Positions 20,397-64,000 of a stretch of DNA of 64,000 nucleotides are shown piece after piece. The notes beneath the pieces are model-generated. The model was not told where the DNA came from. It ran no database searches and was given only the letters and a program-made list of their open reading frames with translations. The stretch's first letter is position 1. Each line of letters opens with the position of its first letter. The position numbers were made by a program, and so were the translations under genes. This stretch comes from Macrostomum lignano (Eukaryota). The stretch is from the NCBI GenBank assembly GCA_002269645.1, contig NIVC01002990.1, positions 62,001-126,000 of the forward strand, written 5' to 3'.

Positions 20397-20434
20397 AGTG
20401 TACAATGGGTTGTTATTGTACATCCAGTAATGCA

Positions 20435-34400: not shown

Positions 34401-34747
34401 TCTTGACGAATTAAAAGTTTACGGTGTCTGAGGACCCATTTTGAACGACCCGGGCCACTACAAGACCGCTCGACTACGATTACAACTACCCTCCCCCTGG
34501 AATTGAGGACCCTGGCAGACGGAGTATCCAAGGAGAAGACTCAACGCAGCAATTTGTGCAATTTTCCATCTTTACGCATGCCGAGACAATGCCGGCGGAA
34601 ATTCAAACGTAGAATCCGCCCCACCTCACTGGTGTCGACCAACAATTCAAAAAACCTAAATCTTCTCCACCCCCACCTCATTGGTGTCAGCCAAGTGGGA
34701 TAACGAAACAAAAAAATCATTTCAATGAGTCGTTTAAAATTAACGTC

Positions 34748-39000: not shown

Positions 39001-40453
39001 GCAACTGGTTCAAGTAGCAATCATGCGGAGGGAGCTCCAGACCCTAAACCATGCCGCCACAGCCGAAGCTGCGCCGACTAATTTGACTAACCGACGCCCA
39101 ACATTGAATCTAACTGATCATATCCTGAGGCCAGTCACACGTGAGGAGCTCCAGACTCACCAGCGTGCTGACTCTGCCATCGCCATGATGATCAATCTTT
39201 TGGAAAGCCGACAGCCAAAGCCACTGCTGAATCAGCGTTTGAATATGACGCGAGACGAACAAAACCTATTAGCATTCTACCAACAGCTTGAAGTCAGAGA
39301 CAACAGACTACTAGTGATACATCTCGACGATGTTGGCGAGGAAAAAACGGCACGGATCATCCTGCCAAAGAGTCTTGATGCCACGGTTTTCGCCGACCTC
39401 CATGGTTCACCCTACTGCAGACACATGGGCCGAGACCTCACTATCGCGAAGGTGCGCAAAAGGTTCTGGTGACCTGTCCTGGCCAAGGCAGTGTCCAACT
39501 ATGTCGCTTCCTGCCAGACCTGCACTTGGAGCAAAGGACAGCGACAAATTCTGGCGCATGTACAATTGTTTCCGGTCTGTGAAATCTATGGGCGATGTGC
39601 AATCGACATCCTGGGCCCCACTGGAGACCCAACAGACCGAGGAAACAAGTATTCATACATATTGACCTACGTCGACACTATGTCGAAATACCCCTTCGCC
39701 TTCACCATGAAGAATCAGCGGACCAAGACCATTATAACGCTCCTGCAGGAACAAGTGTTTCCGATCACCGGAATCCCGGCATGGATTCACTCCAATCAAG
39801 GGAAACAGTTCACAGGGCATGAGTTCCGGCACTTCTGCAAGGTATACGGCATCCGGCAGACCACGACACCGCCTTTTTTGCCATAGGCCAATGGACAAGC
39901 CGAGTCGTGCAATAAGAACATCAAGAAGGTGCTCACCTGTCTCCTAGAAGACCATCAGCAATGGGACAAGATGCTGCCAGCCGCTTTAACAGCTTTAAGA
40001 TCAGCAGTCAATCGTACAACCGGGTTCTTGCCGCATTATGTCGTCTACGGAGTGCCCTACCGGTATCCAATTGATAACACCCTAGACCAACTGGATGTAT
40101 CAGTGGATCTCCCGGAGTACATTGCCAAGCATCAGCGCAGACTAGCCGAGACAGAACGAATTGTGCGACAGCGACTGAGGACTGAGATCCAGCGCCGAGA
40201 GAAGTACTACAAGAACCGGCCAAAGCCCGTGGAGCTGCAGCCCGGAGACTTGGTTTGCCTGGCCAACCCGAAGCTTGAACTGGGAGAGCTGCCCAAGTTC
40301 CACCGGCCATACAAAAGTATGTACAAGGTTGTCAAGAAAGTTGGAGAAGTGGTGTATTGGATCAAGCCAGCAACAGCCCGCCAAGGACGCCCAGCTGAAA
40401 TGCTAGTTCACCATAACAACATCATCAAGGTGCCGCAGATGATGGCAGATTGA
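36100..40453 (+). pseudogene. Gypsy pol (protease, RT, RNase H, integrase), broken by stops and frameshifts
   Basis: LLDTGS protease motif. RT with PKKDG, RIVQDFRSLN, YLDD. RNase H with IERPIGYFSR, TDHAAL. Integrase zinc region LHGSPYCRHMG...CQTC, IDILGP, NGQAESCNK. Confidence 0.92.
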
Positions 40454-41967: not shown

Positions 41968-44632
41968 GAAGACGAATGGAGGCGCTTGTCAACTGTTGCC
42001 AGGTCCCCCGGCGCCCCCACGCCTGTGGTAGGCCAGTCTACCACTGGGGCTCCTGCAACGGTTGGCAACACGCGAAGTGCCTCCACCTGGTGGGACAATA
42101 TTTGACGTCATTTCTGCTCTCCCGGATGAACTGTGCGCTTTCCCCTCATTGCCCCCACCTTTGGTCCAATTGTTGCCCCTTCCCTTGGTCCTGCTTTGTT
42201 TTGCTGTGTTCCTCCCAGGGTTTGTCCCCTTTTTCCCACCAGTGTTCCCCTCAGTGTTCCCCTAATTGGATCCATGTAAGAATTTTGTATAAAAATCATT
42301 GTGTTTACTTCTTCTTTTTCTGCCCTCCCTTCAACTACTGTTTTTCCTGCTCTCGCCTCTGTTTAGTTAAGTTGTGAATTTGTAGTTAACCGCCTGTTTG
42401 GCACTGTCTCGTAATCATCCGTCAAATTTAATAGGGTGCGACATTCATTTTATTGCCTAAATCCATTTATTAGTCAACTAACTTGTCAATTGCTTATTAA
42501 CCTCGTGGAAAAAATAATTTTCTATATCATTGACTACAATAGTAATTGCTAATGTTTGCTAATACTAACAAACAATAATACTAAGTTTTATATTAATATT
42601 TATCCAGTTGGTCTTAATCGAAGCCTCTAGTTTATATTGAGTTCTTTGCCCACGGGGCATAAAATAACCAATCAGTCTCAACTCAAAAAAAGCTCTGAGA
42701 CCCTCAACATTCTGTAAAATGACATTTACAATAGTGGCAGCGCTACTTTACTACTGAAAGTAACACAACTAGCAATCTTGATGAATTACGAGTTTACAGT
42801 GTCTGAGGACCCATTCTGAACGACCCGGGCTGCTACAAGACCGCTCGACTATGATTACAACTATCCTCTCCCTGGAATTGAGGACCCCGGCAGACGGAGT
42901 ATCTAAAGAGAAGACTCAACGCAGCAATTTGTGCAATTTTCCATCTTTACGTGTGCCGAGACAATGCCGGCGGAAATTTAGATGTAGAATCTGCCCCACT
43001 TCACTGGTGTCGACCAACAATTCAAACTGCCAATTTAAAAAACCTAAATCTTCTCCACCCCCAACTCAATATTATAATTAAAAAAGCCATTAATATACTA
43101 AAGAACAAAAAAGTGCTAATTTTCTATCTGCAAAAATATTGCCTTATTGAAAGTTTTTGTCTTGCACCAAATTGCGCCAATTTTTTTTGTCTTACACTCT
43201 TAGACTATATTGTACCAGCTTCTCTACCTGCCTACTATTGCACCAAAATGTGCCAGTGAAGCACATCTTCAATGTCTTTTTGCACTAAAATTTTCCATGA
43301 AAAATGCCACTTTCCTGACTGGCATATATTTTTGGTTGAATAGTCAATTTTTTAAGTAGGCTAGACTAACCTTGAAAACAGAAAAGTAAGTGTTGGTCAT
43401 AATAATTTATTTTCTATATTTAAATTTCATAAAATTCTAATTTTGATTTTAATTTGACAGACTAAATTTTAGGAACATCTTTATAAGCTATGGTGTATAT
43501 TCAATCAAATATATTCTAACTTTAATGATAGATTAGCCTAAAATTTAATTTGGTAAATAATTTATTAATATAGAATATAATATAAAAAACATTTATTTTA
43601 TTTGATAGCTATAGGACTAGAAGGAGCTTTTTAAAGATTTTTTGTTTAGAGCCTTAGGCAAAGAATATTTGCCTTCAAATATAAACATTTGAAATTGAAG
43701 CCCTACAGCCTATTTTTGGATATTGGGCTATTTCGATATTGGATATTATTTATACATATTTTTTTCAAGATTTAAACCTGACGTAAGTTTTAAAATAAGA
43801 GAAAGCTTAGATTTTCAATTACCAAAACAAAAAGGGGTAGGGGCCTACTATAAAAACTGGATTGCTAGGCCCTAGCCTAATAATATATTTAGTAATATAT
43901 TTAGAGATTTAGTATATTTAGATTTTTTATTACTGGGATAAAATAATCTAATACATATCTCTGGTTATTCTAAAAGTACAAATAATCTGCCTGGCTGAAT
44001 TGAACATAGTATGGCATTGTAATTTTACTGGAAGCTTCTTCCGTTACTTTTCTTCTGAATCAAATGATCTTCTGTAAATTGAGTCGAGGTCTTTAAGCTA
44101 TATTTAGAATTTTACTTAAAAACAAACTGTCATTGTGATTGTATTAGTATTTACTCCCACAAACAAACTTTTTGACCAATATGCACAATATATCTTGATT
44201 ACGAAGATTATTATTATGATTATTTTAGTAGCTAAAAGTAGAACTTTTCAACTTAGCCAACACGTTTTTACCAATTTAAATGGCAGATGAGTATAACAAA
44301 ACCCTAGAATAAAAATGTACGTTTTCGTTTACCTTGAGTGATAAAGGTTCGTACTTTGTGAATAGCTTTCAAGAAATCTTTTTTTTTAATCGCACTAGCT
44401 AAAATTTCATTGGTCCCCAGTTTCTACAAAACCCAAAAAATGTTTAAGATCCGTCAGTACTCAAATTAGTAGAAGGACGCGAAACTAAGTTTCTTAGAAA
44501 ATTTTCAGAGGCAGTTTTTTAAAAATAATACGTTACGGACTTACTTTGACTTAGCTGCAGGGCTGTCCCGGAGGGGACACAGCGGGAAGGCGCGGGGCCC
44601 ATTCCGCTAGTCCCTGAACGGCCGACGCGTCG

Positions 44633-47629
44633 CTATGGACGGAGGGTTGGCGCCGCCCAGGGAGGTCCCCCAGTGTCGCCAGCAGCTATAGTGCTCTCTG
44701 GAAAGGAGAGTTCAGCCCTGCGGGTGGCCCGAAGGTAGCGCATGAGCTGATTAAAGTTTTCGGGTTTGCACGCTTCAGTAATAGATGTGTGTGGCCCGAG
44801 GTAAGTGAGTCTGGCCCACGTGAAGGCGGGACAGATGCTGACGAAATGCTCAGCGGTTTCGTCACCTGAGTTGCAGAAACTACAGGTGGCGTTGGTGGCG
44901 TTGCCCTGCAGGTACTGGTGCCTGGAGAAGCAGCCGTGACCAGAGAGGGTCATGGTGGCAGCCCGGATGTCTCTGCGCGAGAGGCGCAAGAGGAGCTTCC
45001 GGAGCTGGTGAGAGGGCTGAGGGACAGCGCCTCTGGATTGCCTGCAGTTCGTGCGGTTCGCCCAAGTCGAGCGGTGCTGAGTCCTGATCCACGCTTTGAT
45101 GCGCGAGTCGATGACACAGCCAGGAATCGGGACAAGAGGTTCGGGGCCGAGAGAGGAGCCGGAGGCACCAACTTTTGCAAGGGTGTCAGCCAACTCATTT
45201 CCTCGGATCCCCACATGCCCCGGAACCCACTTAAGGGTAATTTTGTTGGCGGAACCCAACATGTTGAGGAGTTTGATACAGTCGAGGACTGTAGCAGAGT
45301 TGGTGCTGCAGCCACTGATGGCGTGCAAGGCAGCTTGGCTGTCCGAATGGAAAATGATGTTCTTACCAGTAACGCCAGTGGCGAGAAGCTCTGCAGTGCA
45401 GGAGCTGATGGCCAGAACTTCATTTTGGAAAACACTGGAGTTGACCCCAGTGTATTGAGCGTGGGTAGCGATGACCCTCCCGTTCAGAAAGATTCCAACA
45501 CCAAAGCCGGTGTTGGCTGACTGCTTAGAACCGTCGGTGTAGCAATGAAGCTCACCAGGGTTCCATTGGTCATTGATGTTATCGCGCGAGTCGATAGCTA
45601 CGGAGTAGCGCTGTCTCAGGTTGAGCGTTGAGGCAATGCCATCGGTGAAGACGCGATTGGCCTGACACTCGTTGAGAAAGTTGAGGCACAGATCGCTATG
45701 CGGGACAAGGTTCCACTTAGCAGGTGCTCTCATGTAAATGAATTTGACGCCGGCATCAATTAGACGCCGCGTCGTTCTAGCCGCCTCACCCCTGATGAAG
45801 AGGTCAAGAGGCGGAAGATTAAGGAAGGCCCCCATGCCAGCAAAGGGCGTGGACCTGGTGGCGTTGCAGATGAGCCTACACGCTCTGCCTTGGATCGTGT
45901 TGAGCAGGTCTGCATGGCTTTTGACCTGGGTAGCGCTAACCCAGACAACAGAGGCGTACGTAATGGCAGGTCTAACTACGGAAGTATAGATCCACCAAAG
46001 CCGCTTTGGGGATAGACCCCAAGAAGTGCCAAGTGCTCGTCGGAGCTGGGCCAGGATGGCTGAGGCACGCTTGGCTTTTGCTTTCACGTGGGAGGACCAG
46101 TTGAGCCGGTGGTCAAGTATGACCCCGAGACATCTGGTCTGGTGCGCGAAGGCAATATCTCTGCCGTAGAGCTGCAGAGGACGTATGTTCCAGCGTAGTC
46201 TGCTGGTAAACATAGTGGCAACGGTTTTGGGCTCAGAGAGTTCCAGACCATTGTCATTGGCCCAGGATTCTGCTTTGCGGATAAAGCTCTGCATCAGATC
46301 CCTGAGCGTGCTGGGAGACGGTCCTGCCACAATGGCAGTGACGTCATCAGCATACCCGACTTTGAAGACGGGGTCGGGTCGGGAGTCACTCAAAAGAGCG
46401 TCCATGACCAGGTTCCAGAGCGTCGGGGTGAGGACTCCGCCTTGGGGTCCACCCTTACAGACTCTGGTGGAGGCAGTTTGCCCAAGAAGTTGGGCAGTGA
46501 CCGTACGGTTGGAGATCATGTACATGATCCACCGTATGATGGTAGCATGAGCTTTGCGATTTTGAAGGGCCCTCTGAAACGCTTCAAAGATAACGTTGTC
46601 AAAGGCGCCAACAATGTCAAGAAAGAGAGCCAGAGCGTAACCGTCACCCAGTACCGCCCTTTCAATCTTCTCGACAATCGCATGCAGGGCGCTGTCAGTC
46701 GACCTCCCGGTACGGAAGGCGTGCTGATTATTGCTGAGGGGCATCGCTGTCAGCTCGCAGGACAGCAGCCGCCAGAGAATAAGCCTCTCAGTGAGCTTAA
46801 GCATTGCTGACGTTAAGCTAATAGGCCGGAAGGCCTTGACGCTTTGGTAGTCACCCTTCCCAGGTTTGGGAATAAAGACTACCCGAGCTTCAGTCCAGCA
46901 TTTGGCAACGTATCCCAGCTGGATAGAGGCCCGCATAAGATTGCGGATGAGTCTCAGGAACGAGGGTATCTTGGCTGCTTCACGAAGGAGAACAGGGTAG
47001 ATACCATCAGGTCCAGGAGATTTGAAGGGTTTGAAGGTTCTGACCGCACGAGCGATTAGGTCTTCAGTGACAATGCCCGCCGCTAGGGTGGCTCCATCCA
47101 TTGAATGGTTGGGCTCCGGTCTAGCAGTAGGTACCCTCGGGAAGAATGTGCTAAGCATATGCTGAAGCACTTCTTCAGGGTCTTTAGTAAGAGAGCCATC
47201 ATCTTTTTTGATCATGGCTAATTTGGACATTTTGTCCATTGTAAGGGCCTTGACAAGCCTAGAAGTAGGTCTGTCTTGATCCAATTCATTGCAGAATTGG
47301 CGCCACTTACATTCCTTGGCCTTGCGCACTTCAGATTTGAAATTGCGGGAGGCTTGCCGGAAAAGCTCCATGTCCTCCGGGTTTCCGGTCTTCATGGCAC
47401 GGCGATGAAGGCTTTTGGCCTTCCGCCTGAGTTTCCCCAGCTCCGGGTTCCACCACGGCGCCGAGGTCTTGCCTTTGTAGGCGCGAGCAGGACAAGCCGC
47501 TTCGTAGGCTGCGATAATGCAACCTGTCAGCGTCTCAGCCATATGATCCACATCCTCGCAGGTCTCAATCGGACGTAAGTCCGTGAGTTCCTGCAGGTGC
47601 AGATCAAGGGTAGCCTTGTAGCACTCCAC
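44633..47629 (-). CDS. LINE ORF2 remnant: RT + RNase H + CCHC, no AP endonuclease (998 open codons)
   Basis: APWW, KSPGPDGI, FRPISL, GGPQGGVLTP, YADD. RNase H motifs YTDGSK, SDSQAAL, WVPGHVGIRGNELAD. C-terminal CSFC...ETAEHFVSIC. The frame opens at the post-APE linker (…ECYK…). Confidence 0.92.
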   Translation of the reverse strand: MECYKATLDLHLQELTDLRPIETCEDVDHMAETLTGCIIAAYEAACPARAYKGKTSAPWWNPELGKLRRKAKSLHRRAMKTGNPEDMELFRQASRNFKSEVRKAKECKWRQFCNELDQDRPTSRLVKALTMDKMSKLAMIKKDDGSLTKDPEEVLQHMLSTFFPRVPTARPEPNHSMDGATLAAGIVTEDLIARAVRTFKPFKSPGPDGIYPVLLREAAKIPSFLRLIRNLMRASIQLGYVAKCWTEARVVFIPKPGKGDYQSVKAFRPISLTSAMLKLTERLILWRLLSCELTAMPLSNNQHAFRTGRSTDSALHAIVEKIERAVLGDGYALALFLDIVGAFDNVIFEAFQRALQNRKAHATIIRWIMYMISNRTVTAQLLGQTASTRVCKGGPQGGVLTPTLWNLVMDALLSDSRPDPVFKVGYADDVTAIVAGPSPSTLRDLMQSFIRKAESWANDNGLELSEPKTVATMFTSRLRWNIRPLQLYGRDIAFAHQTRCLGVILDHRLNWSSHVKAKAKRASAILAQLRRALGTSWGLSPKRLWWIYTSVVRPAITYASVVWVSATQVKSHADLLNTIQGRACRLICNATRSTPFAGMGAFLNLPPLDLFIRGEAARTTRRLIDAGVKFIYMRAPAKWNLVPHSDLCLNFLNECQANRVFTDGIASTLNLRQRYSVAIDSRDNINDQWNPGELHCYTDGSKQSANTGFGVGIFLNGRVIATHAQYTGVNSSVFQNEVLAISSCTAELLATGVTGKNIIFHSDSQAALHAISGCSTNSATVLDCIKLLNMLGSANKITLKWVPGHVGIRGNELADTLAKVGASGSSLGPEPLVPIPGCVIDSRIKAWIRTQHRSTWANRTNCRQSRGAVPQPSHQLRKLLLRLSRRDIRAATMTLSGHGCFSRHQYLQGNATNATCSFCNSGDETAEHFVSICPAFTWARLTYLGPHTSITEACKPENFNQLMRYLRATRRAELSFPESTIAAGDTGGPPWAAPTLRP

Positions 47630-48255: not shown

Positions 48256-49961
48256 GATGAAAGGTTGGTGGGCTACCCTCAAAGGGGCGCGGTACCCACC
48301 CGGCCGCTCCACCTGACCGGGCAGTAGGCCAATAGCACCCTCAAGGCTGGCCCGACACCAGGAGGGGGACCGCTTGCGACCGGACTACTCCCCGGCCTTC
48401 CAGCCCATCGGCACGGTCAACACCTTAGGCATTAGAGAATACGTTGAGCAGTACCACGGCCTGCAGGTTGGCGAGCCAGACCCGCATACCCAAATTCGGC
48501 CGAAGCCACTGGATAGGGTCGCCAGCGCCGGAGCCCAGTCTGTCCAGCAGCCCTAGGGACTGCCTTGAACACACGCGGGGACGAGTACCCTGGGTCGACT
48601 TGCGAGACAGCGTGGGGGGTCTGCGGCTGCCAGAGGCAAATAGAGGGTGCAGACCTCCCACCAGCCTTGACCTGCTGAAGATAGGGGCAGGCGTGAAGCA
48701 TCGCAGACCTTAGCCCATGGGCCTAGTCTGTCTCATACTTCACTGGCATGCTGAATACGCCTTCGCGCGCAATACGTTACGGAGATAGGAGGCTTTCCAT
48801 TTTTCAGCACAAAAATTGTTATTGCTTTTGTTAGAAGGACAACCCGATGTTCATCCATGAATGTATACGTCTCGCGCGCCTTTCTTTATATAGCTCTATT
48901 GATATTCATATGGCTTTTCGTTTAGAAAATTGGGAATTAGGAAAACCTGCCTCCTTATTTTTTCCAAGAAACGTAGTTTCCTGTCCTTACTTTGAGTAGT
49001 CCAGTGATAGATGAAGCGGTACGCCCCTTTCAAACAACTACGCGCGATTGCGAAACGGACCTCAGGTCTATATCAGATCAGAAATGAGAAATCTCACGGT
49101 TGCCCCCTTTCTCATACTAAGAAACTTGCATGGGATTACATAGAAAATTTGGAATATATTAGATCGAGGCATGTGTTCGCTTTCAATGTATATTATTTTT
49201 GCTTGACCGCCTGTGATTGTGATTTATAAATGTGCACTTCGTAAGATACATGAAGTCTGAGCCTGTAGCTGTACAAGTATCTTGTAAACTTAAAACGTTC
49301 TCGCAACGTTGTAACCTTTCGTTTTTGTTTGCTTTGTGAAAGCAGTGTCCTTTATAATTTGATAAACGAAGAATGAACTGAAACATCAAAGTGACGCGAT
49401 TACAAGAGAGCCATATACAAATAAAGTTTACACTAACATGCCGTATTGGAGAGAGTCATTAATAGCGCATCAATTTTGCAGCATCATTTTCAGCATCAGC
49501 GACGCAAACAGAAACAGTGGGAAAGCAATTTTTGCACATTTCCAACTGCTGCAGCGTAGGCTTTTTTACAGCCTGCAAGTCTGAAACGCGATTAATTTCT
49601 AGTGCAGAATGAGCGAAATTGGATACAGTTAGCGGCGCTTTCACATTGAAGACAGCTGCTTAATTTTGTTGCGGTCATAAATGCGCGCAATTACGATCGA
49701 TAGCACAATTTCAGCAGTTTTAGTGTCCTGTCCCCCCCATTACATTCTGCCATACCCAACTGTCACATCAATTAAACAAACGTCCTATTAAAACGGAAAT
49801 TTAGCTACAAGGCCAACCGCGGTGCATTTCGCAATTGGGATAAAAAGCCGTTCGAAAACAAATTATTCCAGTAACTACTTGACTATCCAAGCAGCAAACG
49901 CGCGCAGTGTGCGGCAGCTCCAGATTGTACTAACGGATACGTTTTCCAACTGTCACCTGCA

Positions 49962-50417
49962 ATGAAGAACGAAATCTTTGGTTTGCTTTTGCTAGCAGCT
50001 ATTGTAGTGAGTTAACGGTATCTGTTTTATTGATTTACAATTTCAGCAGTATACTTTACTGATTGATGACTTACAGTTTTTATATTGTCAATATAATCTG
50101 TATAGGCCAGTGAACCGTTTGAGGGGCTGACTGAGGAGGAGATGGAATTGAAGCTGAAGCCCTGTCTAGTCTACAACATCAACTGCCCAGCTGACGGCAG
50201 CATGGGCAACTACAAAGAGATGAAAAAGGAGCTAGAAATGATGAAGGTTGGCATCAAGCTGCAGGGCGGCAGGACACCGCCAGAGTGCACGGAGTGCGGC
50301 CGAGGCGAGCGGTGCGACCGCGAGTGCTACTACGCCCTATTGAAAGTGGCGGTGTTGGAGCTCCCTCTCGTCCGGAATCAGAATCAGCAAAGGTTTCCAG
50401 GGAAGCGCTCCGTCTGA
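49962..50417 (+). CDS. Small secreted Cys-rich precursor, 118 aa; exons 49962-50006 and 50106-50417
   Basis: Exon 1 MKNEIFGLLLLAAIV ends at a GTGAGT donor. A 99-bp intron with a CTGAT branch-like site ends at TATAG. Exon 2 is in phase: ASEPFEG...6 Cys...QQRFPGKRSV*. AATAAA at 50522. Confidence 0.75.
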
Positions 50418-50609
50418 TACTGGAAAATTTATTTCGGTACATTGAAATACACTGACTGCTACGGCATTCTGCAGTATTCCGACTGAATGAGAACCAAATT
50501 AATTTTTGATGTAATTGCTACAATAAATCACACTTAAAATTATTAAAATATACGCATAAACATATTTAGAGTCAGCGAAATTATCACTTTATCATTATCA
50601 CTTATCATT

Positions 50610-50690
50610 ACTAGATTATCGCCTAGTTTGACTAGATTGGCGCCGAATTTGATTAGATTGCCGCCGAATTTGACTAGATTGCCCCTCCGA
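50610..50690. repeat. Short 21-bp tandem repeat (ACTAGATTGCCGCCGAATTTG), ~4 units
   Basis: Direct. Confidence 0.75.
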
Positions 50691-51677: not shown

Positions 51678-54600
51678 CAAGGAAGCCTCTTTGTTCGCTT
51701 CGCTCACCAGGAAGCGACACTCACTTGGCCCCTCCCCACCTCCTCTACAAGTTTAGTCTCGTTTTGGGAACTTAGGTAGCAAAGAATTTTTGTCCTTCGT
51801 TTACTGTACACTGAATTACTCATATCTTTTCTATGTTATGCCTATATCTTCTCCTGCAGGATATCATTTAGGCAGCAAAAAACAACTGATATCAACTCAC
51901 TCTGAGCAATTCTCTGATTTTCTAAAGTCTAATTTTTTAATCGAACATTTGCATAATACATCATGGGATACAAGTGCTGTGTTCCAGCTTGTGTTACTAA
52001 TTTGCCTCGGTATAAGAAGGACCCGACTGTTTCCATCCACAAGTTTCCTTCTTTCGAGAATCTGGATCTGCTGAACAAGTGGATCGCTACAATTCCTCGA
52101 CAATGGACTGAGGCCGAGCTGTGTAAGCTGCGGTCTGACCCAAGTCACAACTCTCGGGTTTGCTCTCTGCATTTTCCAGCTAAGTTCTTTGTGACTGTCT
52201 CTATGGATTCCAACCCAAATCGCAAAAGGCCGGCATCTGACGATCCATCGACTGCTACTGCTAAGCTGAAAAACCGGCGTCTGACAGATGATGCTGTGCC
52301 GTGCATCTTCCCGAATGTTGCATCCTACTTGAGCAAGGCCGTCCTGGAAGAGAGGCAAACGGTTTGTACATCGGCTGAGAGCCGTCGAGAGAACGACATC
52401 CAGCGTTGCGAGGTAGAAGCAGAGGAGCTTCTACAAAAGGATGTGATTTCTGACTTCCACGCTATTGTGTCATACGATCTACCAGATCATCTAAGGTGCT
52501 TTTTCAAGGTGATCTCTGAATCGAGTGTAACCTTTTTTACAACTAGAATGTCCGGTGCCGGCAACTTGGAGATCGCCACATCGCTGAATGTTGGCCAAGA
52601 GCTGCTGTTTGAGGTCACAGTTGGTGGTGATAAGCAAGCCTCTTTTGCTGGAGATCTGGCAGCTGACGGCAGTCTTAAAACCTTTGCCCAACTTGAAAAC
52701 ATCCTAGCTAGGCTAAAAAATGTCCGTTTGGAAGATTGCCGGCATGGTTATGAGGAGCACCTCTTACTAGCTCAGGAGGCAGTCACGAAAGCTATCACCG
52801 ACTTGTCAGCTAAGATTGAAGTCAAGAGTGATCAAGAGCTGGATACATGCATTGAGGAGGCTGCTTTTGCTAAACTGAATTTTCTTGTCGAGCAGCTAAG
52901 CTTTTCGAGTTTGAAGAAGGGGAAGCTAACATACTCCAGCGAGCTACTTGCTTTTTCATACCTGTTGCAGCACCACAGCCAATCAACGTACAATTTCATT
53001 CGGAAATCCAACACAGTCAACCTCCCAAGTGTTAGGCATCTGCAGAGGCTTTCTTCCGGATTGAGCAATGACCCTGACATCAAGGCTACCGAAGATTATC
53101 TCAAGCTAAAAGTTGACAGCCTGCCTGAGTCTGAGAGGGTAGTGCTTCTTGCAATCGACGAATTTATTCGTCGAAGCGAATGGAATTCAGTGGAGGCAAG
53201 GTATTTGGCACTGACGCAGAAACCGATGAGCTCGCCAAACTGTGTGCGCTTTTTTGATCAAGTCGCTGCATGGAGACTTCCAGGAAGTAATTTCTCTTAT
53301 TCCAAAAAGTAAGCTTAGTGCTCTGGACTTGCAAAATCACCTCACTGACTGCCTTGCTCTGCTTGATAGGGTTCACCTGAAGCCAGTGGTGTGCATTGTT
53401 GACAACAATGCAGTGAATAGGAGCCTCTTTCAGGGTCTTCTATGCAAAGGCAAGCTGCTATCATCAATTCCAAATCCGGTGTCTGGCGAGCCGCTGTTCC
53501 TTCTCTTCGACCCTGTACACAACTTTAAGAACATCTTGAACAATTGGATTTCGCGCCAGGTGTTTCAGTTTCCGGACTTTACCGATCCCCAGAAAATCCA
53601 AACAGCAGATTTTCGCGATTTGCACAAACTTCAAGAGCAAGAACTCGGGCAACCAGCTCGGATCGCCTTTCAACTGAATACAAGGTCCTTGAATCCAACA
53701 AACCTGGAGAAGACTAATGTTCAGCACGCAGCCAGCATCTTCAGCGAGTCTACTGTAGAAGCAGAAAAGTTATACAATTTTTCCTCTGGCTTGGTAGCTT
53801 TCCTAGCGCTCATTCTTAACATGTGGACGATCTGGAATGTCAAGACCACTAGGAAAGCGAAGGAAAAGCGGCTTCTCGACGCCGCTCCGCTGGTGCCGAA
53901 CGATCACCGCCTCGACAAGCTGCGCCAGTTTGCCGCTTTCTTCCAACGTTGGAAGGATTCGAAGTTGCCCGGCTTGACTGCTCCCACTTTCCTTGCTGTT
54001 AAGTCCTGCTGTCTCACTCTTGCTGATCTTTCCGAGCACCTTTTCTCTAGGTTTTTATTTCCCTCTGTTTTGACAGGTAGGATAGTCAGTGACTGGATCG
54101 AGCGGCGCTTTGGTCGCTACCGCCAGTTTCATGGAGGCAACTATTTTGTTTCTGTCCGGCAGATCCTTCAAGCCGAGAAGAAAATTCGCGTTTCCAGCCT
54201 GCTTCAGTTTTATGGCCTTGGACTGAAAGATTTAAAAATTCTTGACCAGGCGAGTTCATCCGAGTTTTTTAATCCACACTTATCCGTGAAGCTTTCAGTT
54301 CTCCAGCATCTTGACGCCGCTCTTACATCTAGTGACCGAAACATTTGTTCCTATCTTGGTGGCTACGTGTCTAAAGCTCTATGCGGCCAGCTGAAGTGCA
54401 CTGACTGCAAGAATCTTCTACTTACTAACGATTACTTGGAGTTTATTGCCGAAGAGGATTGTGCTGACGACTTTGCCCTGATTCAAATGCGTGACCGAGG
54501 CGGTCTGAAGTGCCCCAGCAAATTCGTATTTTTTCTTTTGAAGGCATCCTACTTCATGTTTGAACATCTGCGAGATTATAGTCTGTTAACTGCTGATCTT

Positions 54601-55159
54601 CTCACCTCTGGTAATTTAGTTCAAAATATTGTTGAGCTCTGCCAGGACTACGTGAGTGAATCCACTGATTTTACGACTCTTTCAAGCCAGACTTGCAGTT
54701 GTGGAAAGGCAGCTGCTACTCTTTCTTCGCGGATCTTAATTCCTGCAGTCCGGATTTATCTAAAGAATTTTGTCAATGAGACAAACGATGAGAAGGCGAA
54801 GAACCAGAAGGCGATGAATCGTAAGGCGTCCAAGCTTTCCAGCAAGAGTTCGAGTTAGCTGTTTAATATGCGTTTTAACGAGGGAAGCTCAGAGTTTAAG
54901 CGAAGATTTTTCCTTTTTGTGTATAATATTTAATGACGATTTTTATTTTTTTCAGTTTCATTCATTTGTTGTATAATTTTTAATTGCAGCCTTTTATTTT
55001 CCAAACAAACACGCATCAATTTATACACTTTTTCATACTGAGCGCACTGAAATAAGTGGGTTCTCGTGTAGTCTGGGGAAGAAAAACGAGACTCAACTTG
55101 TATAGGCACGATTTCAGTGTCGCTTCCTGGTGAGCGAAGCGAACAAAGAGGCTTCCCTG
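51678..55159 (+). mobile_element. P-element superfamily DNA transposon (THAP transposase), 44-bp TIRs, 7-bp TSD
   Basis: TIRs at 51678-51721 and 55116-55159 (one mismatch, CA...TG ends). GAACATC duplicated at 51671-51677 and 55160-55166. Subterminal inverted motif at ~51748-51766 and ~55083-55101. Confidence 0.92.
51963..54858 (+). CDS. THAP-domain P-element/THAP9-like transposase (~965 aa if one A is restored at 53161-53162 and one at 53237-53239)
   Basis: THAP: CCVPAC...HKFP...W...VCSLHF...DAVPCIF. Core: LAIDE, IVDN, FDPVHNFKN, NVQHAASIFS, SDWIERRFG. Restoring the two As gives DEIYSSKRMEFSGGKVFG...ELAKTVCAFLI. Confidence 0.9.
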
Positions 55160-57587: not shown

Positions 57588-60500
57588 TTATTCTTGACGC
57601 AGACGGTAGGTGCCAGCTGATTCCACTGTGATGGAGAGAAGATACTAATTGATACTCAGTCATATTTGCTAACCAATTTGAGCTAACGTGAATGATGCGC
57701 TTCTCATGCGGATAGTTGGCTTTGAAGTGGCTTTCAGAGTGGGCTTGAAAATCCAAGTTGATTTTGGCTTACCGGTTCGGCTCTCGGGCGCCGGCTGACG
57801 GACGCTGCCAACGCTGGCGGATTTCTTGCGAATCTCGCCTGAAATTTTACGATTTATACACAATTAGACTTGCTACGCTGGTAGCTGTTAGATCCAAGGA
57901 TTAGGATGCTATGCTAATTTCTTATTCTACGTACAATTGCACATGTCCTGTGCCTTAAAATCACTAAAATGGCACGGCTCGGCTCATTGATTTTATGAAT
58001 CTATTTTATCATTCTTAGCTGACTGTGTAGAAGCTTTATGACTATCAATAGAGCAATAAGAAAGGCACAACATATCAAAAGATGAACATTAGGTCTGCTT
58101 CCTATCGAAAGCAATAACAATTTTTGTGCTGAAAAAATGAAAACCTCCTATCTTTGTAGTGTATTTTTTCGGGAAAACCTGCCTTCTAAAATTTTCCAAG
58201 AAACGAGGTTTCCCGTCCTTCTATTTGAGTAGTTCTTGGATACATCATGGACAATTAAGCAACTTACGCTTCAAACTTCGCACTACTTTGCTGCCCTGCT
58301 TCTCCTCCTTTGTCATTTCTGTCTGCTTCTTGGCAAAGTTGATAAACACCTGAAGATAAGTACAGGGGAAAGTGGTGAAAAGATCACCAGTGAAGCTTTT
58401 ATCTACAGAGAACTTACTCAAAAAACAAAGCAAAACGCACCTGGTCAAGCGTTGTCTGATTAACACTATAGTCCTGCACGGTTCCCTCCGATTTGAGGCT
58501 GTTGACAACGTTGAAGATGCGGCTCAGAGTGACATCCTGGCTGATCTGGTACTGCAGCAGCGTGCCGTGCTCTTCCTTCAACTGCGCCTCCGGCAGCTCG
58601 CTCATGAAGCGTTCGTGAAGACTCAGTACGTCTCCTGTTAGCAGGCGGTCGCTGCTACTCGCGGCAGGGCTTCTGTCCATCATCTTTGGGTTCTGATGGC
58701 CATTGTCAGAGACGGCTGTTTCAGACAATGGAGCCTCGGCGCGTGGAAGACGCAGGAAAACCGTGAAACCTTGGCCATATTTTGTCTTCAGGTGCTGCGG
58801 ACTTCCCAGGCACTTCAGTTGGCCATTCACCTTGAAGGTTGGATGCAAATGTCTGATTAATGTGACAAATGTCTGCGGAAACGAACCATGATTCTCTACT
58901 CGTTCGCTCACTCTTTCTATACTGCCCAAGGTAAAGTGCTATTTATTAAAAATCACAGTTACCATAATAGTGAGCCTGTGGCATAGGGCCTGACAGTCCT
59001 CCATGCTGTGACTAGTGAGGATCACACAGGAGCCAGCGGCCACCATTCTTTGGATGCAGCGCCACAAGAAGCGCCGCGCCCCGGGGTCCATTCCAGCAGT
59101 CGGCTCGTCCAGGAACACAATGGGCGGTCCGCCAATAAAGGCAATGCCGCAGGAGAGCTTCCGCTTGTTGCCGCCGCTGTACTCTTCAGTCAGCTTGTCC
59201 AGGTGAGGCACAATGCCAACCCTATAAAAATGTGGAACCGCTTTTGTCAGAAAAAGATAAATTAGCAAAAATCAATTTGATTGGCCAGTACTCACATTCT
59301 TGAAATGTAGGTAATTAGCTCAGGAATCTGATCCTCCGCGATGCCGCGAATCCTAGCAAACAGCTGCAGTGTCTCTCTGCCAGAGAGCAGCGGCAGGAGG
59401 GCATCAAACTGTGGACAATAGCCCATCTGCTTGTGCGCTTCGAGTACATCCGTGAGAATAGAATGCCCATTTAGGGTGGCGTCGCCACTCGTCGGATCAA
59501 TGTCGCCGGTCAGCATTTTAAAGGTGGTGGTCTTGCCTGCACCATTCACGCCCAGAAAGCCGAAGCACTCACGCTGCGAGACACCCAGAGCGACGCCATT
59601 CACTGCGGCCCGAGGACCAGTCCTGGTATGGAAAATCTTCACCAGATCCCGAATCACCAGACAGTTGCTACCTGTGGCGCCGCCGGAATCTCCGCCAGCG
59701 TTGCCCAGCACGCGATCACGCTCTGCTTTAACATCGTCTTCCTCGACTTCCCGGCGCTCCAGCAGTTTGCTGTACTTATCTTGATGGCAGGATCGGTAAA
59801 TGCGCCCGGTGCAGCAGCCTTGGCCGCAAAAGAAGTTGTACTCAATTAGCAGTACCAGTACAAAGTATACGATGCTTTGCACAGCCAGGCAAATAATGTA
59901 GCGTATGGTTTGCTCCCATGCATTGTCACTAATCGTAACGTCGCCGTAAGATGACGCTAGAGTCTGGACGCTAACTCCCAATGAGTCAGCGAGCTCCTTG
60001 AGCTTTACGGAAAACTGATAGTAGTAGTTAAGCTCCATTAGTCCCTGTCCAAGACAAAAGTGAGGAAACACGAGGAACACATACTTCAATGCGTTTGCAG
60101 TATTCTGCATCTGGTCGTCCTTGTTCTCCAGAGCGATCATTTCTACGATTGCTACTGACATGGTGGTGACGAAGCCGACGCCAAGGTTAAAGCATGACAG
60201 CATTGTGAACGCTTTGCTAGGTACACTGAGCACCCAACTGAACGGGTACATAACCGGCGCATTGGCAAAGCCGAACAAAAGCATGATGACAATGAAGGGG
60301 CCGATAGTATCCTTGCTGACAAACGCCTCCGATTTGAAGGCAACGAAGATCAGAATGAGAATAACTAACGGGACTAAATAGTTCACCATGTTCCACAAGT
60401 GGTTTATTAGCCAATAGAGCGCTGGATTGATACCCGACACGAACTGCAGGTGCTTGGCATTCGTTCGTCTCTCTGTTATTAAGAATAGCACAAAGCTAGC

Positions 60501-63500
60501 CGGAATAAATGAAAGGGCGAATATGATGGAGACCACTGTGATGGCGGAAGTGATTGTCTGGCTTGTCAACGTGTTTTCAACATACTCGGAGCGCAGTGTA
60601 ATGGGATGCGTCCAACCGGACACTCCATACAGATTCTCAGAGGCCCCAGTCGGTAGCCGCGAACGAAGCATAGCATTGCTTAAAATATTCAGATAAGCGG
60701 GGCCGGACACGTATCCGCGATTGTCGTACCAGACCTGCGCTCTTAGGAGCTCCGAATTGTTAGTAGTTGGCTTTAGTGCATTGAGGGCATCGGAAAACGA
60801 AGCAGTAAAGTTGTACACGATCGAGTTTCCAACGTTAATGCCCATAGCAGTGACCTCAGATTTGCTGACATAGTTCAGCGTTGGATCGGTGTCGTTGACG
60901 AACAAAGAGAAACCACCGAATCGGATCTTGAAGTATTTTGATACACTAGATTGAATGTAGTTAGTCACATTGTACAGTGTGTAATTTTCAAATATATCCG
61001 CACTCAATAGATTCTTGCTAGCTGGGGTGGGCCAATCAACGCACTTTGCACTTTCTGGATACTTTTCGTAGGAGCAGCGACAGTTGGAGGTGTCCAAAGG
61101 CAGATTGGTAGGCGTTGAGCCCCAAGTTGCAGGAGGATTTGTTGGCGCCAAACAGGAGAATTTGTCGTTGCCATGCTCAGTTGAGGTGCTGACACAGCGA
61201 GTTCCAAGAGAGTCTGTGTTGTAGAAATGCGACTTCAACTTGGCTGCGTCTTGTAGATTTCCAACACTTGGTGTCAGCGTCTCAACGAATGAGTAAAGCT
61301 TCTTCGTTCGCAAAGCGTTCCTGTCCCGTGTGCCTAACATGTACCATGGGGCCAGCTGCATTGGCGGATTATCCCCATCGGTAGGTCTGATTTGTTGCAA
61401 GCCGAGCGAAAGAAGAATGAAGAATATCGGCAGAATAAATTCTGCAACGAAGCCCATCTTCGAGCGGCGAATAACGGTGAATCGCTTGATCCAGAGCGCC
61501 TTCACTTGATGGCGCAAAGGGTGATCAGTATAGCGTAAAGTCGGCGGTTGAGAGAGCGAAGCCCGGCGGCTGCCACGAGGCATGTCCAGTGGTACAGCGC
61601 TTGGAGTGGCGCAACGCGGGCTGTTTTGCTGCTTTGTATCCAGCAAGTCATCATCATCAACCAGCGGATTCGAGGCAGCGGCCGCCTCCAGTTGGCGCTC
61701 TTTTCGGAAGCTGCTGCGGCTAGAGCGAAGGTTGACGACAGCTGACGCATCCTTGTCCACGGTTTCTTCTCGATCAGCTTCAGTAACGTTCAGAAAAATT
61801 TCCTCTAGCGAGCAGTCTTCAATGCCGAACGATTCGATCCCGAGTTCGTCACGACTATTTTCTAGCTGTTGAAACAAGTTTGAAAAACTTTCACTGGCAT
61901 TGAACGGCAGCTTCACTGTTACCTCGCTAGTGGTACACTCGCCTAGCTGTGAGGTGGGTACGTAGCGCTGCACAAATGACAATAGCTTGCTTTGTTCACA
62001 ACTGGTTACCAATGTCAAAGTGTAGCCATGACCGAATGCCTTCTTTAGGAACATTGGAGAGCCGGAGCAAACAAGTCGACCTTTATCGATGATGCAGATT
62101 CGGTCGCCAAGGATGTCAGCTTCGTCCATATGGTGAGTAGTGAGCAAGATTGTACGACCAGATCGGAACTTGCCAAGCACATCCCAGATGGAGCGCCTGG
62201 CGTGGGGGTCCACTCCTGCAGTTGGCTCGTCCAGAATTATTAGCTTTGAGTCTCCCACAAAGGCCATGGCTACAGACAGCTTGCGTTTCATGCCGCCGGA
62301 CAGGTTTCTGCTCAACTCGAATCGCTTGTTATCGAGGCCGACGTCCACAACAAAACTGTCAATCTGTGAGCCTATCGTACTCTTGTCCAGGCCTTTTAGC
62401 ATACCATAGAAGTAGATATGATCCTCCACAGTCAGATGGTTGAACAGCACGTTATGTTGAGGGCAAAATCCAAGGTGTTTCCGAATTTGATCCATTTGTG
62501 TGCGAATGTCGTGTCCATAAATGTAGGCTGTACCCGTCGTGGGCGTGTACAAACCAGTCAAGATCGAAACGGTTGTACTTTTACCTAAAGAAAAATGGTT
62601 GGTTTCGAAAATTAGGCTGAAATGAGGTTTAAACAGAAAAATGCAGCTAATATGATTCTTACCAGCTCCATTGTGCCCCAGGAACGAGGTGACCTGGCCT
62701 TCGTAGAAATTGTACGTAACACTGTTGACAGCAATGAAATCCTTAGCATTTTTGCAGGCACACAAGCCAGGCTTGTATACCTTCGTAAGCGCTCGAAGTG
62801 CGGCTCCAACTTTTAGATTTCTAGGCTCTTCCTCAAAGTGCTGCCGATCACCTGTCATTTCAACATCTCCCTGGTCAGGCGCCAGCTCAACCTTGCTGCA
62901 AGAGCTGCACCAATAAGATTTGGTAAAAGGAAAGTAAAATGGTTTCGGAACGCCATACTTTCCTGGAAAAACCTTTTCGATGTACCAAGTTAGAAGCATT
63001 AGCAGAAATGCGTCGACCCACAGCATAAAAAGAACACCGCCAAACGTAAATGAACTATCCATCAGAGGACTCTTCGCTACGTTATCTGGCTGTATTCCAA
63101 TATTCGCAAGTTCCCAGAGACCAATGTACTTGCAGCCGAGGCCAAACCCAATTTGCGGTATTAGGCAGCTGGCGGCAAGGGCGCCGCGCCCATGCTTTCG
63201 ATGAACCGGTCAACAACAGTGTACGGAATGTAGCCGAGAAAAAACAGCACACCAGCAAACGCCGACGCGACACTGGAGTTCGAGAAAAAAACCGAGATGA
63301 AGAAGGCCTCACAGATAGTGCTGACTACGAAGGATAAAATAAAAAAGAACAGTATTATCGGATGGCTGTTCACGATGATTCCGCCAGCTTTAATTATAAT
63401 AGTCATTAGAATTGTGGCCACCAGCATTACGCATCCAGAAGTGATGAACCAGGCTAGCCAGTGTTCCCAGTCGGCCAGCCCCATGATTTTCATCATCTCT

Positions 63501-64000
63501 TTAAGTCGGCTCTCCTTCTCGTACACCACAGCATTGACGAGCAAGGTGACACTGTAAATCCAGGCCAGGGTCATGATCATCGGGATGACGGACTGAATAA
63601 CCGTCGTAAACTGATCCTGGATGTAGCACGGGCTGGGGAAGAGACGCAAGTAGTTTATCTGGCTAGCATTTCCCCCGAGAATTCGGCCGGTAATGCTTTG
63701 CTCAAGCAGCTCTTGAATGTGAAGAAAAAACGAAGTAAAATATTTGAAGTGTTTGGGATAGGTCGAGCGCTGACCCGGTGACCAGGTACTTGCCGTGACG
63801 CGAAACCGAAGCGTGCTGTCTACCATACTCGAGACCATGCGCAGACGATATTTCTCAAACGTGGCTCCGCCCAGAGTATCAAACGCTACAGCCGCCATGA
63901 AATAAGGCTTACTGTCGTTTTCGTTCTGCTTGAACTCGTCAATCAAGTAAAGCGAATAGTCATTCATGGCCGTCTCCGTTTGGAAGCCGCGCAACTTGTT
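57588..64000 (-). CDS. ABCA-subfamily full transporter, 5' part outside the window; exons >64000-62663 (1-base frameshift near 63180), 62584-59296, 59221-58963, 58830-58441, 58349-58268, 57838-57773, 57625-57588 (last two less certain)
   Basis: [20 protein letters not shown]1: GHNGAG|[52 protein letters not shown]2: [52 protein letters not shown]. Junction phases are consistent. The orthologue cannot be assigned by eye. Confidence 0.93.

What the first reader, a model, noticed from the sequence alone, without database searches (positions are those of the whole stretch)
49962..50417. Hidden two-exon gene for a secreted six-cysteine peptide precursor with a C-terminal amidation signal
Seen: a 45-nt exon encoding a signal-peptide-like MKNEIFGLLLLAAIV, absent from the ORF track, splices in phase to ASEPFEGLTEEEMELKLKPCLVYNINCPADG...KK...GGR-TPPECTECGRGERCDRECYY...VRNQNQQRFP-G-KR-SV*, with AATAAA ~105 bp downstream. 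Established: Gly-Lys-Arg marks convertase cleavage plus PAM amidation. Inference: the Cys spacing (C-x6-C ... C-x2-C-x5-C-x3-C) does not match the insulin, CHH/ITP, eclosion hormone or trissin patterns I know. It may be an undescribed neuropeptide, hormone, pheromone or toxin family releasing an RFP-amide peptide and/or disulfide-bonded domains. This is the best candidate for new biology in the window.
Basis: partly seen in the sequence, partly recalled or inferred. Interest (0 to 1): 0.75.

Follow-up and report, generated by a model that had tools for sequence, protein, structure and literature searches.

The report
Flatworm orphan secreted six-cysteine protein gene
This is a real two-exon gene of the flatworm Macrostomum lignano, already in GenBank as a hypothetical protein, that encodes a small secreted six-cysteine helical protein from a gene family found only in this species, and the amidation signal that suggested a neuropeptide is not shared by its relatives.

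Summary
The gene has exon 1 at 49962-50006, a 99-nt GT-AG phase-0 intron, and exon 2 at 50106-50417. The product is 118 aa with a signal-peptide-like N-terminus, six Cys, a C-terminal G-K-R-S-V and AATAAA at +105.

The gene is not hidden. Its product is 100% identical to GenBank 'hypothetical protein BOX15_Mlig014137g1' of Macrostomum lignano, and that annotation was built from RNA-seq transcripts.

An exhaustive HMMER search found true relatives only in M. lignano: at least 8 diverged paralogue groups with a median domain identity of 30%. All share an ~80-aa domain with the same six Cys plus invariant P, R and Y. Every paralogue gene examined has a phase-0 intron at the end of the signal peptide. 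Two-domain members carry one domain per exon.

AlphaFold2 gives a confident helical bundle (pLDDT 86.6). It has no Foldseek, Pfam or PDB-sequence match.

The GKR tail is specific to this paralogue. The tails are variable and predicted disordered, so the conserved unit is the whole disulfide domain, not an RFP-amide peptide.

Best reading: an orphan secreted helical mini-protein whose basic C-terminal tail is trimmed and, in this paralogue, possibly amidated. Its biological role is unknown and I found no expression data. The neuropeptide-precursor reading is weak. Interest is modest.

The parts
49840..49847 (+). Possible TATA-like element (ATAAAAAG), 122 nt upstream of the ATG
   Evidence: Pattern scan only. 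Two paralogue loci have similar elements at -95 to -97. No shared promoter motif was found, so this part is unverified.
49962..50006 (+). Exon 1 (coding part): 15 codons, MKNEIFGLLLLAAIV. This is the n-region and hydrophobic core of the signal peptide.
   Evidence: The start is identical to that of the annotated CDS of BOX15_Mlig014137g1. An in-frame stop lies 31 codons upstream. The hydrophobic core has a 9-residue Kyte-Doolittle mean of 3.26.
50007..50105 (+). Intron: 99 nt, GTGAGT...TATAG, phase 0
   Evidence: All paralogue genes examined have a phase-0 intron at the end of the signal peptide. The annotation derives from RNA-seq transcript assembly (PMC5730564).
50106..50417 (+). Exon 2: residues 16-118 plus the TGA stop (50415-50417). 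It encodes the last signal-peptide residues and the whole mature protein.
   Evidence: Small residues fitting the -3/-1 rule allow signal-peptidase cleavage after A16 or S17.
50127..50360 (+). Conserved six-cysteine helical domain (residues 23-100). Cys35, 42, 76, 79, 85 and 89 are conserved across the family; four of them plus P73, R87 and Y91 are invariant in the 12-sequence alignment.
   Evidence: The family HMM hit on the six-frame translation has E 7e-32 and is the only copy in the window. Alignments are A1 and A2. The AF2 domain model has pLDDT 86.6 and pTM 0.78, with helices at domain residues 5-18, 31-47, 54-57 and 63-80.
50361..50414 (+). Variable C-terminal tail (residues 101-118, LPLVRNQNQQRFPGKRSV), predicted disordered
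   Evidence: pLDDT is about 50. The tail does not align between paralogues.
50400..50408 (+). G-K-R (residues 114-116): a candidate convertase, carboxypeptidase and amidation site, followed by S-V-stop
   Evidence: Read directly from the sequence. This paralogue is the only one with a G-K-R tail. Six of about 8 paralogue groups have a dibasic motif near the C-terminus.
50522..50527 (+). AATAAA polyadenylation signal, 105 nt after the stop
   Evidence: All paralogue loci have AATAAA or ATTAAA 17-105 nt after their stop codons.

Best explanation

It encodes a 118-aa precursor in three parts: a signal peptide split by a phase-0 intron, an ~80-aa acidic helical-bundle domain locked by three inferred disulfides, and a short disordered tail.

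The gene belongs to a multigene family seen only in M. lignano, with at least 8 diverged paralogue groups. The family includes tandem copies and two-domain proteins built by duplicating the domain exon.

The functional unit is the whole disulfide-bonded domain, released into the secretory pathway as a ~10-11 kDa soluble extracellular protein. The variable tail is probably trimmed at its basic residues by a furin/PC-type convertase plus a carboxypeptidase. In this paralogue that trimming would expose Gly114 and could leave a Pro-amide C-terminus.

The protein is small, acidic, free of enzyme motifs, fast-diverging and lineage-restricted. On that basis I commit to a non-enzymatic secreted ligand or binding protein that works at an interface with the outside: a gland secretion, reproductive fluid or pheromone-type product. 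I do not think it is a conserved endocrine neuropeptide.

- Shown: the gene model, its public annotation, the family, the Cys conservation, the intron conservation, the predicted fold and the absence of known relatives.
- Inferred: secretion, disulfides, tail processing, amidation and the biological role.
For: **The gene is real**
- The spliced product is 100% identical over full length to GenBank BOX15_Mlig014137g1.
- The annotated gene span is the same 456 nt, on two contigs that are 99.9% identical.
- That annotation was made only from StringTie/TACO transcript assemblies plus TransDecoder (PMC5730564).

**The family**
- Exhaustive phmmer over 1.84 billion representatives gave 7 true relatives (E 1e-13 to 3e-4), all from M. 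lignano.
- Profile searches added only one more M. lignano protein.
- C35, C42, P73, R87, C89 and Y91 are invariant in the 12-sequence alignment; C76 and C85 are nearly invariant, as are P34 and A92; the fourth Cys (C79) is also conserved across the family.

**Gene structure**
- Every paralogue gene examined has a phase-0 intron at the end of the signal peptide.
- A second phase-0 intron separates the two domains of P0010.
- Two two-domain genes sit in tandem in L011.

**Disulfides**
- Domain 2 of the P0010, P0018 and P0019 proteins lacks Cys4 and Cys5 together, which points to a C4-C5 pair.

**Fold**
- The AF2 domain model has pLDDT 86.6 and pTM 0.78 and is all-helical. The signal peptide and tail score about 50.

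**Secretion**
- Every member has an N-terminal hydrophobic core (9-residue Kyte-Doolittle mean 2.4-3.3) and small -3/-1 residues.

**Other properties**
- The domains are mostly acidic, pI 4.2-6.7 in 11 of 13, so they are not like cationic antimicrobial peptides.
- A prohormone convertase 2 homologue and amidated (GYIRFamide-type) peptides are reported in M. lignano (PMC4490696).
Against: - I found no expression or localisation data. No family gene ID occurs in the supplements of the seven Macrostomum papers where text was held (one more paper had no supplement text held) or in any main text.
- The signal peptide was judged by heuristics only, because SignalP was not available.
- The disulfide pattern and the fold are predictions, and I could not inspect the model coordinates.
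- Proteomes of other Macrostomum species are probably absent from the databases. 'M. lignano only' therefore cannot distinguish a species-level from a genus-level or order-level restriction.
- dN/dS between the one informative pair of duplicated gene copies is 0.43, but it rests on only 10 substitutions.
- The preference for an interface or gland product over an internal hormone rests on family dynamics alone.
Confidence: 0.6

Rival explanations
1. Classical neuropeptide prohormone. The Cys-rich part would be a spacer or carrier. The bioactive product would be a short amidated peptide (NQNQQRFP-NH2) cut out at monobasic R104 and at G114-K-R.
For: - The G-K-R-S-V end is a textbook convertase, carboxypeptidase and PAM signal (established prohormone-processing knowledge).
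- P0003 ends ...S-K-R-FFGFQ-G, which could give FFGFQ-NH2.
- Dibasic motifs occur near the C-terminus in about 6 of 8 paralogue groups.
- M. lignano has a PC2 homologue with nervous-system expression (PMC4490696).
Against: - The tail is the least conserved part. No paralogue shares RFPG or GKR, and some have no basic site at all, ending GEPAE or EAGF.
- The conserved and confidently folded part is the 'spacer'. That is the reverse of what neuropeptide precursors show.
- The N-terminal cut would need a monobasic site with no supporting context.
- No relevant RFP-amide peptide is in the literature searched.
- Neuropeptide families are normally conserved across flatworms, but this one is undetectable outside M. 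lignano.
Confidence: 0.1
2. Whole-domain protein hormone. It would be a C-terminally amidated, disulfide-rich helical hormone acting inside the animal, working like crustacean CHH/ITP although unrelated to it.
For: - The layout is the same: signal peptide, then a ~80-100-aa helical domain with six Cys, then Gly plus basic residues at the C-terminus.
- The domain is compact and disulfide-locked, as circulating hormones are.
Against: - Amidation potential is not conserved among paralogues.
- The many fast-diverging paralogues (median identity 30%), tandem copies and two-domain forms are unusual for hormones.
- There is no sequence or fold match to CHH/ITP or any other hormone.
- No receptor or expression evidence exists.
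Confidence: 0.2
3. Not a functional secreted-protein gene. It would be a chance ORF, a fragment associated with a transposable element, or a cytosolic Cys-x2-Cys metal-binding peptide. It could also be an internal exon of a larger gene.
For: - The locus lies between a LINE-type RT/RNase H ORF (44633-47629, minus strand) and a THAP/P-element transposase-like ORF (51963-54858, plus strand).
- Cx2C and Cx3C motifs can bind metals.
Against: - The gene model derives from transcripts and has its own ATG, an upstream in-frame stop and a poly(A) signal.
- There are at least 8 diverged paralogue groups at unrelated loci, with conserved Cys and a conserved intron.
- The paralogues have CxC rather than Cx2C, and all have N-terminal hydrophobic leaders.
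- The nearest cellular gene, an ABCA transporter, is on the opposite strand about 8 kb away.
Confidence: 0.03

Closest known systems
Crustacean hyperglycaemic hormone / ion transport peptide family (Pfam PF01147)
   Same: Precursor logic: a signal peptide, then a helical domain of about 70-100 aa with six Cys forming three disulfides, then a C-terminal Gly followed by basic residues that gives an amidated end.
   Different: - There is no Pfam match at E<=10 for any of the 12 family sequences.
- No solved structure of any kind reaches significance in Foldseek against the PDB, a library that should hold CHH-family hormone structures.
- The Cys spacing differs (C-x6-C-x33-C-x1-2-C-x5-C-x3-C).
- The amidation signal is not a family feature.
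- The phylum differs, and this family is species-restricted.
Small helical disulfide-rich water-borne pheromones (Aplysia attractin, Euplotes Er pheromones)
   Same: These are small, acidic, secreted helical bundles held by three disulfides, and they form lineage-restricted, fast-diverging families. This resemblance comes from my own knowledge and is a lead, not a test.
   Different: No sequence or structural match was recovered in the PDB-wide Foldseek and HMM searches. The Cys patterns differ, and no functional data exist for the flatworm family.
Saposin-like (SapB) and WAP four-disulfide-core domains (UniProt's automatic names for the paralogues P0010, P0012, P0005 and P0015)
   Same: These are secreted Cys-rich small domains. 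Saposins are also helical with three disulfides.
   Different: - Pfam SapB_1, SapB_2 and WAP do not match any member at E<=10.
- WAP needs eight Cys, and this domain has six.
- Saposin Cys are spaced as two at each end plus two in the middle, and that is not the pattern here.
- Foldseek found no saposin.
Macrostomum lignano prostate-limited putative seminal fluid proteins (Mlig-pro1-76, PMC5977470)
   Same: These too are small, mostly signal-peptide-bearing proteins of the same animal, many without recognisable homologues.
   Different: No link is shown. That study uses older transcript IDs (MLRNA110815), so the absence of the gene ID from its supplement says nothing either way.

Membership tests
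Macrostomum six-Cys helical domain family (defined here from alignments A1 and A2) | About 80-aa domain with six Cys in the register P-C-x6-C(P) ... P-x2-C-x1-2-C-x5-C-x-R-x-C-Y-Y-A | tested here: met
   The query carries all six Cys plus P34, P73, R87, Y91 and A92. The HMM hit has E 7e-32, and phmmer E-values to the paralogues range from 1e-13 to 3e-4.
Macrostomum six-Cys helical domain family (defined here from alignments A1 and A2) | Short first exon coding for the signal peptide, then a phase-0 intron, then one exon per domain | tested here: met
   In the window, exon 1 is 45 nt and the 99-nt intron is phase 0. The paralogues have first exons of 42-78 nt and phase-0 introns. P0010 has a second phase-0 intron between its domains.
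CHH/ITP/MIH neurohormones (PF01147) | Match to the family profile and its six-Cys register | tested here: not met
   Pfam gave no hit at E<=10 for the query or any of the 12 members. Foldseek against the PDB gave nothing below E 2.3. The Cys spacing differs on direct reading.
Eclosion hormone (PF04736) and insulin/relaxin (PF00049) | Match to the family profile | tested here: not met
   No Pfam hit at E<=10.
Saposin-like proteins (PF05184, PF03489) | Match to the SapB profile, and a saposin fold with C1-C6, C2-C5 and C3-C4 disulfides | tested here: not met
   No Pfam hit, and no saposin among the Foldseek matches. The joint loss of Cys4 and Cys5 in second domains implies a C4-C5 pair between Cys only 5 residues apart, which is unlike saposins.
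WAP four-disulfide core (PF00095) | Eight Cys forming four disulfides, and a profile match | tested here: not met
   Only six Cys are present, and there is no Pfam hit.
Neuropeptide / peptide-hormone precursor (generic) | N-terminal signal peptide | tested here: inconclusive
   A hydrophobic core and -3/-1 small residues are present in all members. SignalP was not available.
Neuropeptide / peptide-hormone precursor (generic) | The bioactive peptide is flanked by convertase sites and is the conserved part of the precursor | tested here: not met
   The candidate peptide lies in the non-conserved, disordered tail, and the conserved part is the Cys domain. The KK at 55-56 lies inside a confident helix and is not conserved.
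Neuropeptide / peptide-hormone precursor (generic) | C-terminal Gly amidation donor followed by basic residues | tested here: met
   G114-K-R is present in this paralogue. Among relatives, only P0003 (terminal Gly) and P0012 (GRR inside a long basic tail) have anything comparable.
Neuropeptide / peptide-hormone precursor (generic) | Expression in neurons or endocrine cells, and detection of the mature peptide | not testable with these tools
   No expression or peptidomic data were reachable.

The most novel reading that the evidence does not exclude
The locus is one member of a previously undescribed, Macrostomum-restricted family of disulfide-locked helical signalling proteins with a fold not yet seen in solved structures. 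Paralogue-specific C-terminal processing, here amidation to ...RFP-NH2, would tune the activity of a hormone or a mate- or conspecific-directed pheromone in a hermaphrodite used as a sexual-selection model.
Probability: 0.2. Interest if true: 0.6.

Novelty: new variant of a known kind. Interest (0 to 1): 0.3.

Why it matters
If the family proves to be signalling or reproductive proteins, it would give Macrostomum lignano a tractable set of lineage-specific secreted ligands. This species is a transgenic model for regeneration and for sexual conflict in hermaphrodites. The family would also show a clear evolutionary mechanism, with one exon per domain, tandem duplication and variable processed tails, and possibly a new small helical disulfide fold. 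As things stand it is an uncharacterised orphan gene family, of which flatworm genomes hold many. The gene itself is already in the public annotation.

Tried and rejected
- **Pfam.** The query and all 12 family sequences gave no hits. The two RhoGAP hits at E 0.049 are noise.
- **PDB sequence profile searches.** These returned only an odorant-binding protein at E 1.2 and a viral papain-like protease at E 0.037 (domain i-E 0.32). I rejected both as chance.
- **Foldseek against the PDB.** Neither the full-length nor the domain-only AF2 model gave any match below E 2.3.
- **Spurious phmmer hits.** P0004, P0008 and P0011 are repeat or C2H2 zinc-finger proteins that matched on Cys-rich low-complexity stretches.
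- **Profile searches of the 5.8-billion-protein database.** They added only one more M. lignano two-domain paralogue.
- **Search for extra copies.** tblastn and a family HMM over the window found a single copy.
- **Second contig.** It is 99.9% identical over 12.8 kb, so it is useless for selection tests.
- **dN/dS.** The one usable pair of duplicated gene copies gave 0.43 from only 10 substitutions, which is too few to weigh.
- **Shared upstream motifs among paralogues.** None was convincing.
- **Expression look-ups.** I searched for family gene IDs in the supplements of PMC5816591, PMC5977470, PMC7336406, PMC5730564, PMC12896417, PMC5946080 and PMC12732829 and found no occurrences. PMC10786194 has no supplement text held. 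Several of these papers use older transcript IDs, so the absences say nothing.
- **Literature searches.** Searches for the gene IDs, for RFP-amide peptides and for a Macrostomum single-cell atlas found nothing relevant. McVeigh et al. 2009 (PMC2749192) is not held.

Full report
**1. Observation**

- An ATG at 49962 opens 15 codons (MKNEIFGLLLLAAIV) that end at 50006.
- The next bases are GTGAGT. Read-through stops after two more codons.
- The 99-nt intron ends TATAG at 50105.
- The frame resumes in phase 0 at 50106 (ASEPFEGL...) and runs to TGA at 50415-50417.
- The spliced product is 118 aa with Cys at 35, 42, 76, 79, 85 and 89. It ends ...NQNQQRFPGKRSV.
- AATAAA lies 105 nt after the stop.
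- An in-frame stop lies 31 codons upstream of the ATG.
- A mechanical ORF list shows only the 91-aa ATG-initiated part of exon 2.

**2. Source and annotation status**

The 118-aa product is 100% identical over its whole length to GenBank 'hypothetical protein BOX15_Mlig014137g1 [Macrostomum lignano]'.

The window is part of contig NIVC01002990.1 of assembly GCA_002269645.1 (Mlig_3_7). The annotated gene span is the same 456 nt as in the window. A second contig, NIVC01004082.1, carries the same gene within 12.8 kb that is 99.9% identical. It is a redundant or allelic copy in this partly duplicated genome and says nothing about selection.

The GenBank annotation of this assembly was produced only from genome-guided RNA-seq transcript assemblies (StringTie and TACO, boundaries set by the TBONE pipeline, ORFs called by TransDecoder; PMC5730564). 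The annotated intron therefore reflects a spliced transcript. I could not view the reads myself.

So the gene is real and already public, but it has no name and no described function.

**3. Relatives**

An exhaustive phmmer search of 1.84 billion representative proteins gave 11 hits.
- Three are spurious Cys-rich repeat or zinc-finger proteins.
- One is the query itself.
- Seven are true relatives, and every one is from M. lignano.

Adding cluster members and one further protein from a profile search gives at least 8 diverged paralogue groups:
- Mlig014137 (the query)
- Mlig014068
- Mlig031165
- Mlig001682 / Mlig030151
- Mlig007900 / Mlig032223
- Mlig028719
- the two-domain Mlig029205 and its tandem neighbour
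- the two-domain A0A1I8G7C1

Profile searches of the 5.8-billion-protein set found nothing outside this species. That database includes UniRef. From my own knowledge, UniRef holds many other flatworm proteomes, but probably not those of other Macrostomum species. The restriction could therefore be to the species, the genus or the order.

**4. Anatomy of the family**

*The domain.* Alignments A1 and A2 show an ~80-aa domain. In the 12-sequence alignment C35, C42, P73, R87, C89 and Y91 are invariant, and P34, C76, C85 and A92 are nearly invariant. The consensus is ...L-E-x3-(R/K)-P-C-I-V-x3-N-C-P...P-x-E-C-x-C-x5-E-x-C-x-R-x-C-Y-Y-A-x2-K. Median pairwise identity is only 30%.

*Leaders.* N-terminal hydrophobic leaders with small -3/-1 residues are present in every member.

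*Tails.* The C-terminal tails do not align. They end GKRSV (query)...RRKRWGLRRK...KRFFGFQG...WRRRR...GEPAE...RRRRSHRK...FPDKRR or ...EAGF. About 6 of 8 groups have a dibasic motif near the end. Only the query has Gly-Lys-Arg.

*Gene structure.* It is conserved in all genes examined: a 42-78-nt first exon, a phase-0 intron at or just before the predicted signal-peptidase site, and the whole mature protein in the next exon. In the two-domain gene a second phase-0 intron separates the domains, so one exon equals one domain. Locus L011 holds two two-domain genes in tandem, separated by an LTR retroelement.

*Disulfides.* In three two-domain proteins (P0010, P0018, P0019) the second domain has lost Cys4 and Cys5 together. 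From this I infer a Cys4-Cys5 disulfide.

**5. Structure**

AlphaFold2 run with the family alignment gives a confident all-helical domain. The domain-only model has pLDDT 86.6 and pTM 0.78, with helices at domain residues 5-18, 31-47, 54-57 and 63-80.

In the full-length model the signal peptide and residues 101-118 score about 50, meaning disordered. The KK at 55-56 lies inside a confident helix and is not conserved, so it is not a likely cleavage site.

Foldseek against the PDB finds nothing. The best E-values are 2.3 and 6.2, and TM-scores normalised to the query stay at or below 0.29. Profile searches of PDB sequences and Pfam scans of every member find nothing significant. UniProt's automatic names for some paralogues ('WAP domain-containing', 'Saposin B-type domain-containing') are not borne out.

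Foldseek is weak on small helical proteins. 'No match' therefore means no demonstrable relationship, not proof of a new fold.

**6. What it most likely is and does**

*Shown.* This is a transcribed gene for a small protein with a leader, a conserved six-Cys helical domain and a variable tail. It belongs to an expanded, fast-diverging, lineage-restricted family.

*Inferred.*
- The leader directs the protein into the ER.
- Three disulfides lock the helical bundle.
- The tail is trimmed at basic residues by a furin/PC-type convertase plus a carboxypeptidase.
- In this paralogue the trimming would expose Gly114, which peptidylglycine amidating enzyme could convert to a Pro113 amide.

M. lignano has a PC2 homologue and amidated FMRFamide-like peptides (PMC4490696), so the machinery is plausible.

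Conservation sits in the domain and not in the tail, so the domain is the functional unit. The domains are mostly acidic, which argues against a cationic antimicrobial peptide. They carry no enzyme signature.

Rapid divergence, tandem and exon duplication and lineage restriction fit proteins that act at an interface: gland secretions, reproductive fluid or pheromones. They fit a conserved endocrine axis less well. This last step is inference from family dynamics only.

**7. Rivals**

- *Short RFP-amide neuropeptide.* This is weak. The tail is not conserved, the N-terminal cut would be monobasic, and no comparable peptide is known.
- *CHH-like amidated protein hormone.* This remains possible as a 'works like' analogy. 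Membership in that family is excluded, and amidation is not a family trait.
- *Chance ORF, TE fragment or part of a bigger gene.* The evidence contradicts this. The gene model is transcript-derived, the gene has its own start, stop and poly(A) signal, and the paralogues sit at unrelated loci. The neighbours are a LINE RT/RNase H ORF upstream, a THAP/P-transposase-like element downstream, and an ABCA transporter on the other strand about 8 kb away.

**8. Novelty and score**

The gene is already in public annotation as a hypothetical protein. The family, its domain, its exon logic and its predicted fold appear undescribed (no Pfam model, and no mention in the searched literature).

It is a new family within a familiar class, the small secreted disulfide-rich helical proteins. 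Orphan secreted families are common in flatworm genomes, and nothing here points yet to a specific function. Interest is therefore modest (0.3).

It would rise if expression or mass spectrometry tied the family to signalling or to seminal fluid. I could find no expression data. All supplement look-ups were negative or uninformative.

Noticed in passing
window 44633-47629 (- strand): An intact 998-aa ORF with reverse transcriptase (RVT_1, E 6e-28) and RNase H domains. It is a non-LTR (LINE-type) retrotransposon about 2.3 kb upstream of the gene.
   Followed up: partly
window 51963-54858 (+ strand): Two overlapping long ORFs of 449 and 538 aa. The first has a THAP domain and a P-element transposase-like HTH. 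Together they probably form a P-element/THAP9-like transposon or a domesticated copy with a frameshift or intron between the parts.
   Followed up: partly
window 58414-63994 (- strand): A multi-exon ABCA-type ABC transporter gene (ABC_tran, ABC2_membrane_3 and the ABCA1 R1 domain). It is also annotated on both contigs.
   Followed up: partly
window 50580-50683: Two short tandem arrays lie just downstream of the gene's poly(A) signal. One is a 13-bp unit in 2.3 copies (ATTATCACTTTATC). The other is a 21-bp unit in 3.5 copies (ACTAGATTGCCGCCGAATTTG). Their significance is unknown.
   Followed up: no
window 33649-34651 and 42024-43026: A ~1-kb segment is duplicated within the window at 95% identity. 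It is probably a repeat element.
   Followed up: no
window 39929-40453 (+ strand): A 174-aa ORF with a weak retroviral-type integrase C-terminal match (E 3e-4, below the Pfam cut-off). It is likely a retroelement remnant.
   Followed up: no
window ~19780-20410: A tandemly repeated coding-like motif (LTLPATRNSTSYS...) turned up among spurious tblastn hits. I did not examine it.
   Followed up: no
L011 69-796 and 8001-8740; L012 5805-5912: In the paralogue loci, two two-domain family genes sit in tandem and are separated by an LTR retrotransposon (gag-protease-RT-integrase). A weak, partial domain-like fragment (E 1e-3) lies 2 kb upstream of the Mlig007900 gene and may be a decayed copy.
   Followed up: partly
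P0002 / P0014 / P0016 (UniProt models from an older M. lignano annotation): In older gene models, family domains are fused to a tubulin-tyrosine-ligase protein or to an RT/RNase H polyprotein. In GenBank the ligase and the small protein are separate neighbouring genes (L005). The fusions are therefore likely annotation artefacts.
   Followed up: partly
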